A stretch of 64,000 nucleotides of DNA from Haliotis rufescens (Eukaryota): assembly GCF_023055435.1 (NCBI RefSeq), contig NW_025964001.1, positions 21,018,001 through 21,082,000 on the forward strand, in the 5' to 3' direction. The notes under the pieces are model-generated. The model searched no databases. It was given only the letters and a program-made list of their open reading frames with translations, and was not told the origin of the DNA. The position numbers and the translations under genes were made by a program. Shown here piece by piece: positions 25,701 through 61,327 of this stretch; within the stretch, counting starts at the first letter, position 1; each line of letters starts with the position of its first letter.

Positions 25701-26260
25701 GAAACAAATTCAAGTGGTTTAGAGTCCGCATGTCAACTAAAACTAAAACAGGACACAGACCATTTTTGGTATTAAAAAAAACTAAAGCTAAAAATTGAGT
25801 TGACACAAGACATGTTGTTTGGCCACAATTAAATTTATGCTATTGGATAGGTCTGCCAAATGTATGGATGAGTAACTGAACCATATTTTAACTCAGTGCA
25901 GGGCTGCAGTTTTAAAGTTCTTCAGTATGTAATAAATTCTGAATTTAAGAAGCGATCCATTGGTCAGTTTATTGCCGCGGAAACAAGTTTGCATGTGTAG
26001 TTTAAGGACAGTTCTTTGTCCATATATCAAAGTAGTTGTGGGTACTATGTACTGATTAATAAGAAGATATGATTTTGAACCAAGTCGGGCGTTTTGAATT
26101 GCGGTCCATGCTTTAGGTCTACTTTAGACATTTGAGTGACACACAAGGCTAAATTGTTGGGTCACAATCTATAGAACGTTTTTTCTTGTGTTAGTTTACA
26201 ATGATCAACGTTCAATTCGGTGACGGAAATACACACACATGTGTCCCACTAAGATGTGAT

Positions 26261-26583
26261 AACCTGTGAAGATCCGGGTTAGAATTGATCTTCAGCAACC
26301 CATGCTTGTCGTTAGAGGCAACTAACGGGATCGGATGGCCAGGTTCGCTGACTAGGTTGACGCAGTCCTCGTGTCCCATTTGGGTAGATCGGTGTCTACC
26401 CAATGTGCCTACAGTAAAATCATGAAATGATCGGGTCTGATGCTCAGATAGAGATGCACGACTGAAGATGACTATTACCTGTTTCACCTGTGATGGGAGA
26501 TAAACTTGTCCACACTGAGACAACGAAAACAATGAAGGTATAATACTGTAATATTGCTGAATGCGGCTTTAAACAACAAACAA
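26261..26583 (+). mobile_element. Family C retroposon, degenerate, with unrelated middle part
   Basis: Head CCTGTGAAGATCCGGGTTAGAATTGATCTTCAGCAACCCATGCTTGTCG...; tail AATATTGCTGAATGCGGCTTTAAACAACAAAC. Confidence 0.8.
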
Positions 26584-26601
26584 AAGAAAGATGTGATAAT
26601 G

Positions 26602-26864
26602 TGTATTTGTTTGTTGTTTAACGCCGCACTCAGCAATGTTCCAGCTTTATGACGGCGGTCTGTAAACAATCGAGTCTAAACCAGACAACCCAGTGATTGA
26701 CATCATGAGCATCGATCCACGCAATTTGGATCGATGACATGCATCAACCAAGTCAGCGAGCCTGACCAGCCGATCCCGTTAGTGACCTTTTACAATAAGC
26801 ATAGTCGTCATTTACGGCAAGCATGGTTGCTGAAGACCTATTCTACCCCGAATCTTCACGGGTC
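26602..26864 (-). mobile_element. Family C retroposon, full length, 13-bp TSD
   Basis: TSD AGATGTGATAATG at 26589-26601 and 26865-26877; 5' end GACCCGTGAAGA; (CAAA)n tail. Confidence 0.95.
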
Positions 26865-28828
26865 AGATGTGATAATGAAGGCTATGTTGATTCATTAGGA
26901 AGAAGATCAGTTTATGTTAGTGTCACATTCTGGTATACGCGTTAAACAGAGTTTGATGCCATGAAATGCATTAAATTAATTAAAATAACACTGAATACAA
27001 AACACATATGAAAAATATATTACACAGTAGAGTACCAACGATACCAGCCCACGGCATACCATTCTGCACACACAGCAAATTGTACACAATGTAACATAAT
27101 GTCCAGCTATATATAACGTATGGCCCAATATACAACAAGTACCATACATACATGTATGTTATAGAGGTCATGTATCGTGGATATATATATGGAACAACAA
27201 ACAATATGGTGTCACACATGTGGAATATATGATCAATTCGTCAATTTACCTACCAACAAATCAAACAGCGTGACTTTATTACATACCTCAGTCACTGAGC
27301 AATAACATGTAGCCTCACGCTAGTGATATATGCATCTCCTTTAAATTGTATATTATTACCTCCTGTTTCATTTATAACAATAATTATTAAATATATCCTG
27401 ATCATTCATAAATTTACTTGATTTAGGAGAGGCGTGCATACTTTGTTTATATTGTCTATTTCTCCGATGTGTTGTATTTACTTATTTATCATTGGTATAT
27501 GCAAAATAAAATAAATCAAGCATACCCTATTGTGTTGACAGATACGCATGAACAGCAGTCTGTCCTTGCTGTTTTAGTCACGCATGCAACACGTGTATAT
27601 TCGCCAGGCTACTGACCTGTTCATAACCGTGTCTGTGTCACACGATTGGGATCAAGTCAAACAGCGGCAACAACAAAGCCAAATATCAACATCTACAATT
27701 CTTTGGCAATGAGAAGGGTAACGTGAAATACATAGATAGTGTTACTAACGTTTTGTGATACATACTTAATTGAAACAAATATGATTGATTGGAAAAATAA
27801 GTTTCTTTGTGAAATATGTTTCGTAAAAAATATTATTTAACACAAATTCTCACAAACAGTGAAATATCAATTACTACGGGATTTGACATGCAATTAAAAG
27901 CAGTCACCCGGTATATTATAAATACTTTAGTCAAATTCGGAATCTATATATAGCAATACCTTACCCTTGCATAATGTATTGTATGTGTAATTTATAAAAT
28001 TAACCGGTGTCTGCAAAGCCAGCATATAACAAAGTGACCCAGCTCTTTCGAGCATAGTGTTACACACACCCATACAGTGGAATGCAAAATGTTTCCGGTG
28101 CGATTTTTTTTTTATGTATATACATTAAAATTGATAGATTAAAGTTCAGTTCAAATTCTAGAGTCAAGCGATGCGCTATGATCTGGTTAGTGGTAGCCTA
28201 CGATCATGATGTGATAGTGATAGGATTAACTGGGGTTATTATGAGACATTAAAGCCCGGAGGACTATCCCTCAATAGACATCCGGCTGGTATTGTATATG
28301 TGTGTACATGTCTATAGAGCAACTGAGCAATATATGCTGCTGTCAACCGTCGCCGCCCGTTCAGGTCATCGTGACCTAGCGCTGTTTTCCGGGACTTCTC
28401 AGTAGCAGGAAGTTGGACATATTCGACGATGTTAGCAAGTGAACGACACATTTGCAAAACGCTTGTCGGACTAAAAACAGATTAGTAGCTTTGGCCTAAC
28501 GTCTCGTTACCTTATTTAGGCTACACGTGACACAGTCACCGACATCTTGATCGCTTATGTTATTTATAGCAAATGGGTCTGCTTTATTTTAGAAGTTAAT
28601 GGTGATGAAGGCATGTGGTAATTAAATAGGGAATGTAATGAAAAGATTATAGAAGCTTGATTACCATACAACTTAAGAACGTAACTAGAAGATGTTCATA
28701 TGATTACATTGAATTATGTGTAGACAACATTTTACCAAACAAAATTATAACTTCTTTGAGTGGCATTTAGAAGTTGGAATGGTAACTAAGACAAAATTGT
28801 TATGGATGAGCAACTTCTTAATTACAAT

Positions 28829-30949: not shown

Positions 30950-31222
30950 TTTGTTTGTTTGTTTGTTTGATGTTTAACGCCGCACTCAGCAATATTCCAG
31001 CTATATGACGGCGGTCTGTAAATAATCGAGTCTGGAACAGACAATCCAGTGATTGACATCATGAGCATCGGTCCACGCAACTGGGATACGATGACATGCA
31101 TCAACCAAATCAGCGAGCCTGACCACCCGATCCCGTTAGTCGCCTCGTGCAACAAGCAAAATCGCCTTTTACGGCAAGCATGGGTTACTGAAGACCTATT
31201 CTACCTCGGATCTTCACGGGTC
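30950..31222 (-). mobile_element. Family C retroposon, full length, 11-bp TSD
   Basis: TSD AATAGTTCATA at 30939-30949 and 31224-31234. Confidence 0.95.
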
Positions 31223-31645: not shown

Positions 31646-31913
31646 TTTGTTTGGTTGTTTGTTGTTTAACGCCGCACTCAGCAATATTCCATCTATATGA
31701 CGGCGGTCTGTAAATAATCGAGTCTGGACCTGGCAACCCAGTGCTTGACATCATGAGCATCGATTCACGCAATTGTGAGTGATGACATGCATCAACCAAG
31801 TCAGCTAGCCTGACCACCTGATCCCGTTAGTCGCTTCTTACGACAAGCAAAGTCGCCTTTTGCGGCAAGCATGGGTTGCTGAAGACCTATTCTGTACCCG
31901 GATCTTCACAGGT
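31646..31913 (-). mobile_element. Family C retroposon, full length
   Basis: Colinear with 30950-31222; GGATGTGG on both flanks (probable TSD). Confidence 0.93.
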
Positions 31914-32072
31914 GGATGTGGAGTGTGGGTGTCTGAAGGTGTACTGTAGCACACCACAGCAGACAGCTCTTCACATGTTGCCACTCATGCATCTACTGGG
32001 TACTGCATCCCAATCTTGTGCCAATAACACGGAATGCAGACAGCTATTTATACCATTACCCAAGTGTACTCC

Positions 32073-42642: not shown

Positions 42643-42805
42643 CAGGGGTGGTCGGGTATCCTAGTGGTTTAAGCGTTTGCTCGACAAGCTGCAGACCCAG
42701 GTTCGAATCCTGACATGGGTACAGTGTATGAAGCCCATTTCTGGTGTCCCCTGCCCTGATATTGCTGGAACATTGCTAAAAGCGGCGTAAAACCATACTC
42801 ACTCA
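42643..42805 (+). mobile_element. Family A tRNA-derived SINE with TSD
   Basis: TSD CTATAACAAT at 42633-42642 and 42806-42815; B-box GGTTCGAATCC. Confidence 0.95.
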
Positions 42806-42904
42806 CTATAACAATTGGTTTTGGTTTTTATTATTTAAATCAACATTCATATGAAGAACAAGTTTTATCATACTTCTTGAAAATATTAAATATTTACAAC
42901 AATT

Positions 42905-43838: not shown

Positions 43839-44102
43839 TTGTCGTAAAAGGTGACTATGTTTGTCATAAGAGGCGACTATGCTTGTCGTAAAAGGCGACT
43901 ATGCTTGTCGTAAGAGGCAACCAACAGGATCGACTGGTCGATCTTGCTGACTTGGTTGATATATGTCATCATATGCCAATTGCGTTGATCGATGCTCATG
44001 ATATCAATCATTGGATTGTCTGGTCCAGACTCGATTATTTACGGACCGCTGTCATATAGCTGAAAATTGTGGCGTTAAACAACAAGCAAAAAAAAACAAA
44101 AA
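43839..44102 (+). mobile_element. Family C retroposon lacking the extreme 5' end, with an expanded 22-nt module
   Basis: Four tandem TTGTCGTAA(G/A)AGGCGACTATGC-like units followed by the family C body and tail. Confidence 0.88.
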
Positions 44103-53810: not shown

Positions 53811-53928
53811 GGAGTAAGTATGGTTTTACGCCGCTTTTAGCAATGTTCCAGCAATTCCACGGTTGGGAACACCAGAAATGGGCTTCACACATTGTACCCG
53901 TGTTGGGAATTGAACCCACGGCTTCGGC
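53811..53928 (-). mobile_element. Family A SINE, 5'-truncated
   Basis: GGTTTTACGCCGCTTTTAGCAATGTTCCAGCAAT...CACCAGAAATGGGCTTCACACATTGTACCC. Confidence 0.88.
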
Positions 53929-56656: not shown

Positions 56657-56848
56657 GTCCCGTGAAGATTCCGGGGTAGAATAGTTCTTCAGCAACCCAT
56701 GCTAGCCATAAAAGGTGACTATGCTTGTCTTAAGAGGCGACTAACAGAATCGGGTGGTCAGGCTCGCTGTCATGGTATCCCAATTATTTACAGACTGCCT
56801 TCATATAGCTGGAATATTGCTGAGTGCGGAGTTAAACAACCAACCAAT
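56657..56848 (+). mobile_element. Family C retroposon with internal deletions
   Basis: Head GTCCCGTGAAGATTCCGGGGTAGAATAG, two 22-nt modules, tail ATATAGCTGGAATATTGCTGAGTGCGG. Confidence 0.88.
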
Positions 56849-57340
56849 ATACTTTGACATCCCTACAAGTACAGGTATATGTTGTTTCCTTCTTATGCGT
56901 TGCAGACAAAGTGGCAGAGGCAAGTTTAAATACTTATAGATGTATCTATTTTTCTAATTCATCAAACATTAAATTGTAATAAAGATAGAGCTAAATTAGA
57001 TCACATTTGAATTATGCTTACCTATTAAACTGTAGAAAATTGAAACCGTTCTTTAATCATTTAAGTAATAGTTAGTTTCATTTTGAATGGAGCGTGTTTC
57101 TCGTACTGACAAGAAGGAATACTGTAAAGCCAACCAGAATGTATAATTAAGGTTTTCGATATGCCCTTTCACATTAGATGTGTCCAGATTTAAGGAATAT
57201 AAGAACTGAATTCTAAGAACATAGGTTTGTCTGCTACTATTGTGACATCATATAACTGTTGACAACAATGACAGATGTGTTATTATATCAGTTATCACTT
57301 TGTTAACATACAGAATGCTGTTCAATCACTGAAATCATTG

Positions 57341-61118: not shown

Positions 61119-61327
61119 GACCCGTAAAGGTCCGGGGTAGGAGGCGACTAACGGGATCGGGTGGTCAGTCTTGCTGACTTGGTTGATGCATGTCATCGAT
61201 CCCAACTGCATGGTTCGATGCTCATGATATCAATCACTTGATTGTCTGGTCCAGACTCGATTATTTACAGACCACCATCATATATCTGTAATATTGCTGA
61301 GTGCGGCATTAAACAAAAAACAACAAC
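61119..61327 (+). mobile_element. Family C retroposon with a deletion in the head
   Basis: GACCCGTAAAGGTCCGGGGTAG joined to GAGGCGACTAACGGGATCGGGTGGTCAG; tail present. Confidence 0.9.

What the first reader, a model, noticed from the sequence alone, without database searches (positions are those of the whole stretch)
26602..26864. tRNA-less short retroposon (family C) with a precise 5' end that folds into an H-type pseudoknot
Seen: about 12 copies of a ~270-nt element with TSDs and a (CAAA)n tail but no recognisable Pol III A/B boxes. Independent copies start at the same nucleotide (GACCCG at 26864-, 31222-, 61119+; GTCCCG at 56657+). The head GA-CCCG-T-GAAGATC-CGGG-GTAGAATA-GGTCTTC forms stem 1 CCCG/CGGG and stem 2 GAAGATC/GGTCTTC, with a 1-nt loop 1 and an A-rich loop 3. 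The copy at ~26262 has GATCTTC, changing the U-G pair to U-A and keeping the pairing. Established: several non-LTR clades (R2, RTE, Ingi/L1Tc) define their 5' end with HDV-like ribozymes. I could not fit this head to the HDV, hammerhead, twister or pistol consensus. Inference: it may be an uncharacterised self-cleaving or exonuclease-blocking RNA module, or a LINE 5' UTR internal promoter, on a bipartite non-autonomous element.
Basis: partly seen in the sequence, partly recalled or inferred. Interest (0 to 1): 0.8.

Follow-up and report, generated by a model that had tools for sequence, protein, structure and literature searches.

The report
Abalone SINE with LINE-derived folded head
This is one copy of a very abundant abalone short retroposon whose first 72-94 bases are not a tRNA but a folded RNA module borrowed from the leader of a jumping gene (LINE), a kind of element already reported in 2016, and nothing shows that it cuts itself.

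Summary
Window 26602-26864 (-) is one of 12 family C copies or fragments in the window. Six of them keep the same first base. The genome has at least 25,100 intact heads.

The head is not a new ribozyme. It is a 72-nt module (94 nt in the subfamily that duplicated its third hairpin). The same module sits in the 5' UTR of an I/Nimb-type LINE of this genome, directly behind a 58-nt HDV-like ribozyme. It also occurs in other invertebrate DNA. Such "LP-SINEs" were described in molluscs, Haliotis included, in 2016 (PMC4758252). This scan has met the same head in other windows, there called "family B".

Stem 1 is conserved and pairs in 88% of cells. It shows no compensatory change, and in this SINE a 7-bp closing helix competes with it. 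A second pseudoknot, hairpin-2 loop with the 3' strand, covaries and indirectly favours stem 1.

Self-cleavage is unlikely: 605 of 607 LINE modules keep the ribozyme in front. How the SINE's exact 5' end is made remains open.

The parts
26865..26876 (-). 5' target-site duplication of copy A (ATTATCACATCT)
   Evidence: Read directly. The same 12 bases recur at 26600-26589.
26858..26864 (-). 5' strand GACCCGT. It is also the 5' half of a 7-bp closing helix.
   Evidence: Stem 1 pairs in 88% of cells, with 0 of 4 pairs changed on both sides.
26832..26857 (-).
   Evidence: 7 of 7 pairs change on both sides across 42 aligned modules. The LINE has GTGGAA/TTCCAC here.
26820..26831 (-). Hairpin 2 (AGCA..TGCT) with a C-rich loop. 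One C is deleted in this copy.
   Evidence: 4 of 4 pairs change on both sides. The loop pairs with the 3' strand in other lineages.
26782..26818 (-). Two tandem 22-nt units carrying hairpin 3 (stem GTCG/CGAC, 7-nt loop TAAGAGG in intact copies). Both units are mutated in copy A.
   Evidence: The C2 subfamily and the LINE have one unit. 2 of 4 pairs change on both sides.
26772..26779 (-). 3' strand ACGGGATC, which closes the module.
   Evidence: The minimum-energy folds pair 5 of its bases (CCCGT with ACGGG). The full 7-bp helix with a bulged A appears in the duplex fold, -9.3 kcal/mol.
26658..26771 (-). SINE body (GGCTGGTCAGGCTCGCTGACTTGG...), shared with other LP-headed SINE families of this genome.
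26601..26657 (-). LINE-like 3' tail: stem-loop CGCCG...CGGCG (26657-26622), then the AAACAACAAACAAA-type repeat.
   Evidence: The core GCTGGAAYATTGC is shared with the tRNA-SINE tail and resembles the LINE 3' end.
26589..26600 (-). 3' target-site duplication of copy A. The same bases serve as the 3' duplication of copy B.
26261..26588 (+). Copy B: C2-subfamily copy, tail to tail with copy A. It carries an unrelated repeat inserted at about 26399-26544.
30962..31222 (-). Full-length family C copy.
31655..31914 (-). Full-length family C copy (head begins CACCTG).
56657..56849 (+). Family C copy with an internal deletion (head begins GTCCCG).
61119..61323 (+). Family C copy with a deletion inside the head.

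Best explanation
**What it is.** Family C is an LP-type SINE. It is a short retroposon copied in trans by a LINE, and it imitates both ends of LINE RNA.

**Shown**
- Its first 72 nt (94 nt in subfamily C1, which duplicated hairpin 3) are homologous to a module in the 5' UTR of I/Nimb-type LINEs of the same genome.
- Its last roughly 60 nt are a LINE-type stem-loop plus a short tandem repeat.
- The module has three hairpins kept by compensatory changes and two invariant loops (CGGGKUAGAAU and UAAGAGG). Selection therefore acts on the RNA fold and not only on a DNA promoter motif.
- In the wider family the loop of hairpin 2 pairs with the strand after hairpin 3.

**Inferred**
This gives a double pseudoknot, or alternates with a tRNA-like closing helix that is strong in this SINE.
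- The folded module is a 5'-terminal handle needed in cis. Most likely it is recognised by the partner LINE's proteins or keeps the RNA end intact. R2 protein binds a 5' pseudoknot of its own RNA in a comparable way (recalled, not checked here).
- The exact first base G is set by transcription start or trimming at the foot of the fold, not by self-cleavage.
For: **Homology with the LINE**
- The LINE (L062, minus strand) has endonuclease, reverse transcriptase and RNase H domains.
- It has its own target-site duplication and an (ACTC)n tail.
- It has a 58-nt leader that aligns end to end with RF02682 (27.5 bits, E 0.0048; below the gathering score of 44).
- The module follows directly. Its two loops and hairpin 3 nearly match those of the SINE, and hairpin 1 carries three compensated pairs.
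- The covariance model scores it at 84.8 bits.

**Spread**
- 25,100 exact SINE-type heads in the genome.
- 371 further modules of other lineages in the genome, against 0 for the reversed control.
- 11 of 11 metagenome contigs, 1 of 7 genome-collection hits and 1 of 3 viral-collection hits are true modules.

**Structure, on 42 rows**

| Helix | Pairs changed on both sides |
|---|---|
| Hairpin 1 | 7 of 7 |
| Hairpin 2 | 4 of 4 |
| Hairpin 3 | 2 of 4 |

- 86.8% of cells are paired, against 27-50% when the partners are slid.
- 0 of 500 shuffles reach the observed values.
- Hairpin-2 loop with the 3' strand: cognate duplexes average -6.43 kcal/mol, against -5.30 for permuted partners, and 57 of 10,000 permutations are as low (19 lineages).

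**Publication**
- PMC4758252, section 10 read in full: LP-SINEs in Littorina, Haliotis, Ostrea and Saccostrea.
- It reports about 70 bp shared with Nimb-17_LMi, I-3_DR and RTE-9_CPB.
Against: - No experiment or RNA read bears on function. The only raw reads on hand were size-selected small RNA of a related species. They show no pile-up at the SINE's first base.
- Stem 1 has no both-side change.
- The closing-helix test is not significant (2,042 of 10,000 permutations). Single-sequence folds differ between lineages, with z-scores only -1.1 to -2.3.
- My alignment rows were found with patterns that fix both loops, so loop invariance is partly built in.
- Many rows are single decayed copies. The 18-19 lineages for the permutation tests were picked by eye.
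- No LINE lineage with the SINE's own hairpin-1 sequence was found.
- No LINE with a (CAAA)n tail was found; none was looked for. The direct parent and the partner are therefore unidentified.
- The protein-handle role is an analogy only.
Confidence: 0.7

Rival explanations
1. The module is an exonuclease-resistant 5' fold, xrRNA-like. Read-through transcripts are trimmed 5' to 3' until the enzyme stalls two bases before the pseudoknot. That trimming makes the SINE's exact 5' end and protects the RNA.
For: - The topology resembles that of flaviviral xrRNAs as I recall it: the 5' end tucked into a loop pairing, plus a hairpin loop pairing with the downstream strand. The second pairing covaries.
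- The first pairing is compatible in 88% of cells.
- The SINE starts exactly 2 nt before CCCG.
- In the LINE the ribozyme would leave a 5'-OH that such enzymes do not attack. Retention of the ribozyme (605 of 607) therefore does not contradict this.
Against: - No Rfam family, xrRNAs included, matches at E up to 10.
- There are no reads with 5'-monophosphate ends at G1 in the small-RNA runs (a weak test).
- Both SINE families seen start with two purines (GA, GG) where the LINE has pyrimidines. This fits initiation better than trimming.
Confidence: 0.15
2. The head is only an internal promoter at the DNA level. This is the "LINE promoter" idea of the 2016 paper. The RNA folds are incidental.
For: - It sits at the extreme 5' end of SINEs. 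By the paper it also sits at the 5' end of three LINE consensus sequences (PMC4758252, section 10).
- The first base is a precise purine.
- Internal promoters in the first tens of bases are known for Drosophila I and jockey elements (recalled).
Against: - Thirteen of 15 hairpin pairs change on both sides while pairing is kept. A DNA motif would not require this.
- In the abalone LINE the module lies behind a ribozyme that marks the RNA start. There it is not at +1.
- A promoter role alongside an RNA role is not excluded.
Confidence: 0.2
3. The head is itself a self-cleaving RNA that cuts at its own 5' edge.
For: - The 5' end is precise.
- The first 33 nt align with the P2 and J4/2 parts of the LINE's HDV-like ribozyme far better than shuffles do (z 4.7 and 6.0, 0 of 2,000 shuffles).
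Against: - The same alignment shows that the P3-L3-P1' core is missing. The four bases that include the expected catalytic C are missing too.
- No ribozyme family hits the head, while the LINE leader does hit.
- If the module cut at its 5' edge, LINE copies would start there. Only 2 of 607 LINE-type modules lack the ribozyme junction.
Confidence: 0.04
4. The head is a strongly diverged tRNA or a tRNA mimic. A cloverleaf of 72 nt is made by Pol III and/or cut by RNase P at the first base of its acceptor-like helix.
For: - The C2 head folds as a four-way cloverleaf of tRNA size.
- A closing helix that starts at the first base is seen only in the duplex fold (7 bp with one bulged A). The tool's minimum-energy fold leaves bases 1-2 unpaired.
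- Hairpin 3 has a 7-nt loop with U at position 1 and A at position 5, as in T-loops (recalled motif).
- The stretch GGGKTAGAAT resembles D-loops of some tRNAs (recalled).
- The SINE has no run of four T in the copies read.
Against: - ARAGORN finds no tRNA in the window.
- The Rfam tRNA model gives no hit at E up to 10 around copy A, nor at E up to 1 in two other copies.
- The arms have the wrong sizes: a 7-bp first arm with a 12-nt loop, and a 2-4 nt linker before the 3' strand.
- The closing helix is weak in the LINEs and is not supported by the permutation test.
- LINE copies keep the ribozyme upstream.
Confidence: 0.06

Closest known systems
LP-SINEs of molluscs (Matetovici et al. 2016, PMC4758252; Hdi_LP / Hmi_LP in Haliotis)
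   Same: - A short element flanked by target-site duplications and ending in short tandem repeats.
- No small-RNA head.
- The first roughly 70 nt are shared with the 5' UTR of Nimb/I-type LINEs.
- The genus is the same.
   Different: - I could not compare sequences, because the figures and supplements are not held.
- The hexamers the paper gives before the Haliotis/Ostrea tail repeats (AATATA, ACTAAA) are not in this copy's tail.
- In the passages and section I read, the paper treats the head as a possible promoter and reports no RNA fold for it.
HDV-like ribozymes at LINE 5' ends (R2, RTE, L1Tc/ingi)
   Same: - The partner-type LINE here starts with a minimal HDV-like ribozyme.
- The SINE head resembles that ribozyme's P2 and J4/2 parts.
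   Different: The head lacks P3, L3, P1.1 and the catalytic-C stretch. It matches no ribozyme model, and LINE progeny do not start at it.
5' protein-binding pseudoknot of R2 RNA (recalled: Christensen et al. 2006; Kierzek et al. 2008)
   Same: A conserved pseudoknotted domain near the 5' end of a non-LTR element's RNA, next to an HDV-like ribozyme. It would explain why a parasite of the LINE keeps it.
   Different: No sequence relation was tested. Binding here is pure inference.
Flaviviral and plant-viral xrRNAs (recalled)
   Same: A compact junction with the 5' end in one pseudoknot and a hairpin loop paired to the downstream strand.
   Different: There is no Rfam match, the helix layout differs, and there are no stalling data.
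SINEU / Tx1 with snRNA-derived 5' ends, and pectinoid MESC SINEs with a LINE piece added in front of a tRNA head (both cited in PMC4758252)
   Same: LINE and SINE families share a 5' end module.
   Different: The modules are different. Contig L070 does show the present module followed by a tRNA-like stretch.

Membership tests
LP-SINE | Short non-autonomous element with variable target-site duplications and a 3' short tandem repeat | tested here: met
   The element is about 260 nt. Duplications of roughly 8-15 nt are seen by eye. Tails are (CAAA)n or (CAAC)n.
LP-SINE | Head homologous to the first roughly 70 nt of a LINE 5' UTR | tested here: met
   The module of an endonuclease/RT/RNase H LINE of the same genome aligns over 72 nt. 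The comparison with Nimb-17_LMi, I-3_DR and RTE-9_CPB themselves could not be made.
LP-SINE | Head not derived from tRNA, 5S, 7SL or snRNA | tested here: met
   There are no Rfam or ARAGORN matches on the head.
LP-SINE | Identity with the published Haliotis consensus (Hdi_LP/Hmi_LP) | not testable with these tools
   The sequences are only in figures and supplements, which are not held. The tail hexamers quoted in the text are absent from copy A.
HDV-like self-cleaving ribozyme | Nested double pseudoknot with P1, P1.1, P2, P3 and L3 | tested here: not met
   No hit to RF00094, RF02682 or RF01787 at E up to 10 on the head. The LINE leader hits all three. The alignment shows the core deleted.
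HDV-like self-cleaving ribozyme | Catalytic cytosine in J4/2 | tested here: not met
   The four bases holding it in the LINE ribozyme have no counterpart in the SINE loop.
HDV-like self-cleaving ribozyme | Cleavage at its own 5' edge | tested here: inconclusive
   The test is indirect. 605 of 607 LINE-type modules keep the ribozyme junction upstream. There is no biochemical test.
tRNA-derived SINE | Head recognisable as a tRNA | tested here: not met
tRNA-derived SINE | A and B boxes at tRNA positions | not tested
   No formal box scan was run. By eye, a B-box-like GGATCGATGC lies near base 150, too far from +1.
xrRNA | Match to a described xrRNA family | tested here: not met
   Nothing at E up to 10. 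That Rfam holds such families is recalled.
xrRNA | 5' end and a hairpin loop both locked in pseudoknots | tested here: inconclusive
   The loop-2/3'-strand pairing is supported. The 5' strand/loop-1 pairing is only compatible.
xrRNA | Xrn1 stalling | not testable with these tools
   This needs an enzyme assay.

The most novel reading that the evidence does not exclude
The module is a double pseudoknot: the 5' CCCG pairs with loop 1, and loop 2 pairs with the 3' strand. Its first half descends from, or gave rise to, the neighbouring HDV-like ribozyme, keeping P1/P2 and J4/2 but losing the catalytic core. It works as a widespread, undescribed 5'-terminal guard of retrotransposon RNA that stalls 5'-3' exonucleases. 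That stalling sets the exact first base of tens of thousands of SINE copies.
Probability: 0.15. Interest if true: 0.8.

Novelty: new member of a known kind. Interest (0 to 1): 0.42.

Why it matters
SINEs are defined by Pol III heads taken from small RNAs. LP-SINEs break that rule, and the function of their head has been open since 2016.

Three hairpins and one long-range pairing are kept by compensatory change from abalone LINEs and SINEs to other invertebrates. This shows that the head works as a folded RNA, which narrows the question to testable roles: end protection, protein handle, or initiation. It also shows a LINE that couples a minimal HDV-like ribozyme to this module.

For the scan, the practical point is that this head recurs in many windows under different family letters and should be merged.

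Tried and rejected
**Searches that led nowhere or gave negatives**
- Rfam around the copy gives only miRNA-like hits. They come from the tail-to-tail inverted repeat at 26540-26663, not from the head.
- Pfam on the three longest window ORFs gives nothing, and there is no LINE in the window.
- Tail-only matches in the window are other SINE families or truncated copies, not LINE 3' ends.
- MAFFT alone misaligned the closing strand, and the covariance-model alignment did so too. I therefore tested long-range pairings by cognate versus permuted duplex energies.
- The closing helix is not significant (2,042 of 10,000).
- Position 2 with loop base 19 changes on both sides in 9 rows and is unpaired in 18 of 40. 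Loop base 19 with loop 2 changes on both sides in 13 rows and is unpaired in 16 of 41. Both follow the same two lineages, so neither decides.
- GTCCCG starts (325 matches) are scattered over all subfamilies. Nearly all of the single-module rows shown in full keep GGGATC. So there is no compensation and no subfamily. Rows longer than 80 letters were cut in the output.
- CCCC-type SINE heads (1,238 matches) are ordinary SINE copies or 48-50-nt tandem arrays, not LINEs.
- Rfam at E up to 1 finds no HDV-like ribozyme in the 10 foreign contigs searched.
- Small-RNA reads are uninformative for a 260-nt RNA.
- Paper searches: LP-SINE terms find only the 2016 paper. HDV-like ribozyme plus mollusc/Haliotis terms gave 5 listings, none on this module, seen as listings only.

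**Rows left out**
- Searches used 18 and 19 of the 42 rows of alignment A2.
- I dropped near-duplicates of one lineage: SINE copies L061, L006, L025, L047:2697 and L103:7; LINE copies L091, L098, L088 and L099; L100 only; and L068.
- I also dropped rows that were truncated, cut by a contig end or too decayed: L085, L086, L087, L089, L093, L096, L101, L103:80, L070, L071, L062:1123, L047:1731 and L083:1-48. The choice was made by eye.

**Limits**
- Supplements and figures of PMC4758252 were not seen. They may hold the Haliotis consensus and target-site-duplication tables that would settle identity.

Full report
**The copy and its family.** On the minus strand the element runs from 26864 to 26601/26602. 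It starts GACCCGTGAAGATT and ends in a stem-loop followed by AAACAACAAACAAATACAC. The 12-nt duplication ATTATCACATCT flanks it.
- An 18-nt head probe finds 6 heads in the window, against 0.01 expected.
- BLAST finds 16 places. Twelve are family C copies or fragments. Four share only the tail core with other SINE families.
- Six of the 12 keep the 5' end. The rest are truncated at different points.

**Genome-wide abundance and 5' ends.**
- The first look gave 4,862 candidates, and 40 were scored. Of those, 35 start at query base 1 and 5 at bases 2-4.
- Among 35 full copies read with flanks, 25 begin GACCCG. The other 10 differ by 1-3 substitutions at the same place. Flanks are unrelated.
- An exact 22-23-nt head pattern occurs 25,100 times, and 0 times when reversed.
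- Subfamilies differ at the junction (GATC, GATT or GATTC before CGGG), in the loop and 3' strand of hairpin 1 (C2: TTAGAATTGATCTTC), and in having one or two 22-nt units.
- Earlier notes of this scan call the genome abalone. I did not verify the species.

**No small-RNA origin.** ARAGORN finds no tRNA in the window. Rfam finds nothing on the head at E up to 10. It finds nothing at E up to 1 in two further copies.

**Where the head comes from.** Earlier notes pointed to "LP-SINEs" and to LINEs with a ribozyme. One note's offset led me to a "family B" head that is in fact the C2 head (L061). Another led to a LINE. I checked that LINE myself.
- It has two open frames of 453 and 1,231 aa.
- The second frame carries endonuclease, reverse transcriptase and RNase H domains.
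- It has its own target-site duplication and an (ACTC)n tail. The sequence before the tail resembles the SINE tail core.
- Its first 58 nt align end to end with HDV-like ribozyme models: RF02682 at 27.5 bits and E 0.0048, below the gathering score.
- A 72-nt stretch follows directly. It has the same order of parts as the SINE head: CCCGT, hairpin 1 with the same 12-nt loop, hairpin 2, the same hairpin 3, and a G-rich 3' strand.
- Seven LINE copies with unrelated flanks all begin at the ribozyme's first base.
- This LINE group has 2,120 first-look candidates, and the 40 scored are 97-100% identical.

The 2016 paper (PMC4758252; section 10 read in full, other passages by search) describes exactly this kind of element in Littorina, Haliotis, Ostrea and Saccostrea. 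It suggests a promoter role and says the polymerase is unknown.

**Wider distribution.** A pattern anchored on the two loops found the following.

| Collection | Hits | True modules |
|---|---|---|
| Metagenome contigs | 11 | 11 |
| Bacterial genome collection | 7 | 1 (a scaffold filed under the Solemya velum gill symbiont) |
| IMG/VR | 3 | 1 |

A variant of the pattern that excludes family C and the main LINE found 371 places in the abalone genome. These include several more LINE lineages, other SINE families with the same body, and a tandem array with a period of about 640 bp.

**Structure.** I built a covariance model from 28 modules and aligned 42 modules with it.

| Helix | Pairs changed on both sides | Cells paired |
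|---|---|---|
| Hairpin 2 | 4 of 4 | 87.5% |
| Hairpin 3 | 2 of 4 | 95.1% |

- For the whole structure, no shuffle out of 500 reaches the observed values. Sliding the partners drops pairing from 86.8% to 27-50%.
- The alignment was fitted to the hairpins, which favours them. The raw MAFFT alignment already gave 6 of 7, 3 of 4 and 2 of 4.
- In stem 1, three pairs change only C to U opposite G.
- My patterns fixed the CGGG strand, so compensation in stem 1 could not have been seen.

**What the 5' strand pairs with.** In the SINE the 5' strand can also pair with bases 65-72.
- RNAfold prefers this cloverleaf for both subfamilies.
- Across 18 lineages, cognate 5' and 3' strands pair no better than permuted ones (2,042 of 10,000).
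- The 3' strand pairs better with the loop of its own hairpin 2 than with others' (57 of 10,000, 19 lineages). Whole-helix replacements occur: GATCGT with ACGATC in L065, and ATCTAT with GTAGAT in L092.
The module is then a double pseudoknot with a T-loop-like third hairpin.
- I put the chance that stem 1 forms in the SINE RNA at about one half.

**Not a ribozyme.**
- The SINE's first 33 nt align with the LINE ribozyme's P2 strands and the stretch before P2'. The z-scores are 4.7 and 6.0, and 0 of 2,000 shuffles reach the score. The LINE's own module gives only z 1.7.
- The P3-L3-P1' core is absent, and so are the four bases that hold the expected catalytic C.
- LINE-type modules are preceded by the ribozyme's last bases in 605 cases and not in 2. 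The second pattern would pass about 42% of random flanks.
- The RNA that is copied therefore still carries the ribozyme, and no obligatory cut happens at the module's 5' edge.

**How the SINE's first base is made stays open.**
- The only raw RNA reads were size-selected small RNA from a related species. They show no sense pile-up at the 5' end. They do show a discrete 31-nt antisense species in the body: 63 of 76 reads at that place in one run.
- Contigs of a probable RNA run of that species break at the same 5' boundary, with 146 different continuations. This only shows that the boundary is shared.
- Both SINE families seen start with two purines where the LINE has pyrimidines. This hints weakly at initiation.

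**Verdict.** The ribozyme idea is unlikely. The pseudoknot is plausible but unproven. The kind of element has been in print since 2016, and the scan has already met it in other windows. The RNA-level conservation is, as far as my two paper searches show, not in print.

Noticed in passing
window 26252-26876: Copies B (+) and A (-) lie tail to tail. The same 11-12-nt target (AGATGTGATAA/T) occurs three times: left of B, between the two tails, and right of A. This fits two successive insertions into one target that used the same two nick positions on opposite strands. It does not fit twin priming, which would put the heads inward.
   Followed up: partly
L062 9670-9727 (minus); G000:C223 about 1,716,670-1,716,727: An intact endonuclease/RT/RNase H LINE begins with a 58-nt, nearly P4-less HDV-like ribozyme (RF02682 27.5 bits, below the gathering score). 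Seven copies with unrelated flanks start at its first base.
   Followed up: partly
L062 9670-9727 versus SINE heads (L025, L047): The SINE's first hairpin is much closer to the ribozyme's P2 helix and J4/2 stretch (z 4.7-6.0) than the LINE's own module is (z 1.7). This hints that the ribozyme and the first half of the module are paralogues, or that they recombined.
   Followed up: partly
L105 (G000:C2:41312940-41313260), L111 (G000:C1:866900-867330): Tandem arrays with a 48-50-nt period are made of the unit 5' strand + hairpin 1 + hairpin 2 of the SINE head. Single SINE copies with this unit doubled also occur (L107, L110).
   Followed up: partly
G000:C57:2176615-2195177: About 30 listed matches spaced roughly 640 bp apart form a satellite whose unit contains a diverged copy of the module (L104).
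   Followed up: no
window 42646-42807 and 53812-53916: A tRNA-derived SINE family has a tail (…GCTGGAACATTGCTAAAAGCGGCGTAAAACCATACTCACTCACT) that resembles the 3' end of the ribozyme-headed LINE and shares its core with family C's tail. ARAGORN did not call its tRNA part.
   Followed up: no
L025 1558-1588 (+), antisense to the SINE body: A discrete 31-nt antisense small RNA appears in small-RNA runs of a related species: 63 of 76 reads start at one base in run X22 and 9 of 11 in X23. It is piRNA-like in size.
   Followed up: no
L081 (NZ_JRAA01000003.1), L083 (IMGVR_UViG_3300012776_000087): A scaffold filed as a bivalve gill symbiont and an IMG/VR 'viral' contig both carry this animal retrotransposon module, L083 twice. 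They probably hold host DNA.
   Followed up: no
L070 1178-1257 and downstream: In one metagenome contig the module is followed at once by a tRNA-like stretch (GGGGTGCGTGGTAGTCTAGTGGTAAC...). This is like the scallop SINEs in which the LINE piece sits in front of a tRNA head.
   Followed up: no
window 43839-43926: Copy E carries extra 22-nt hairpin-3 units, as another first-stage note says. The unit is the third hairpin of the module.
   Followed up: partly
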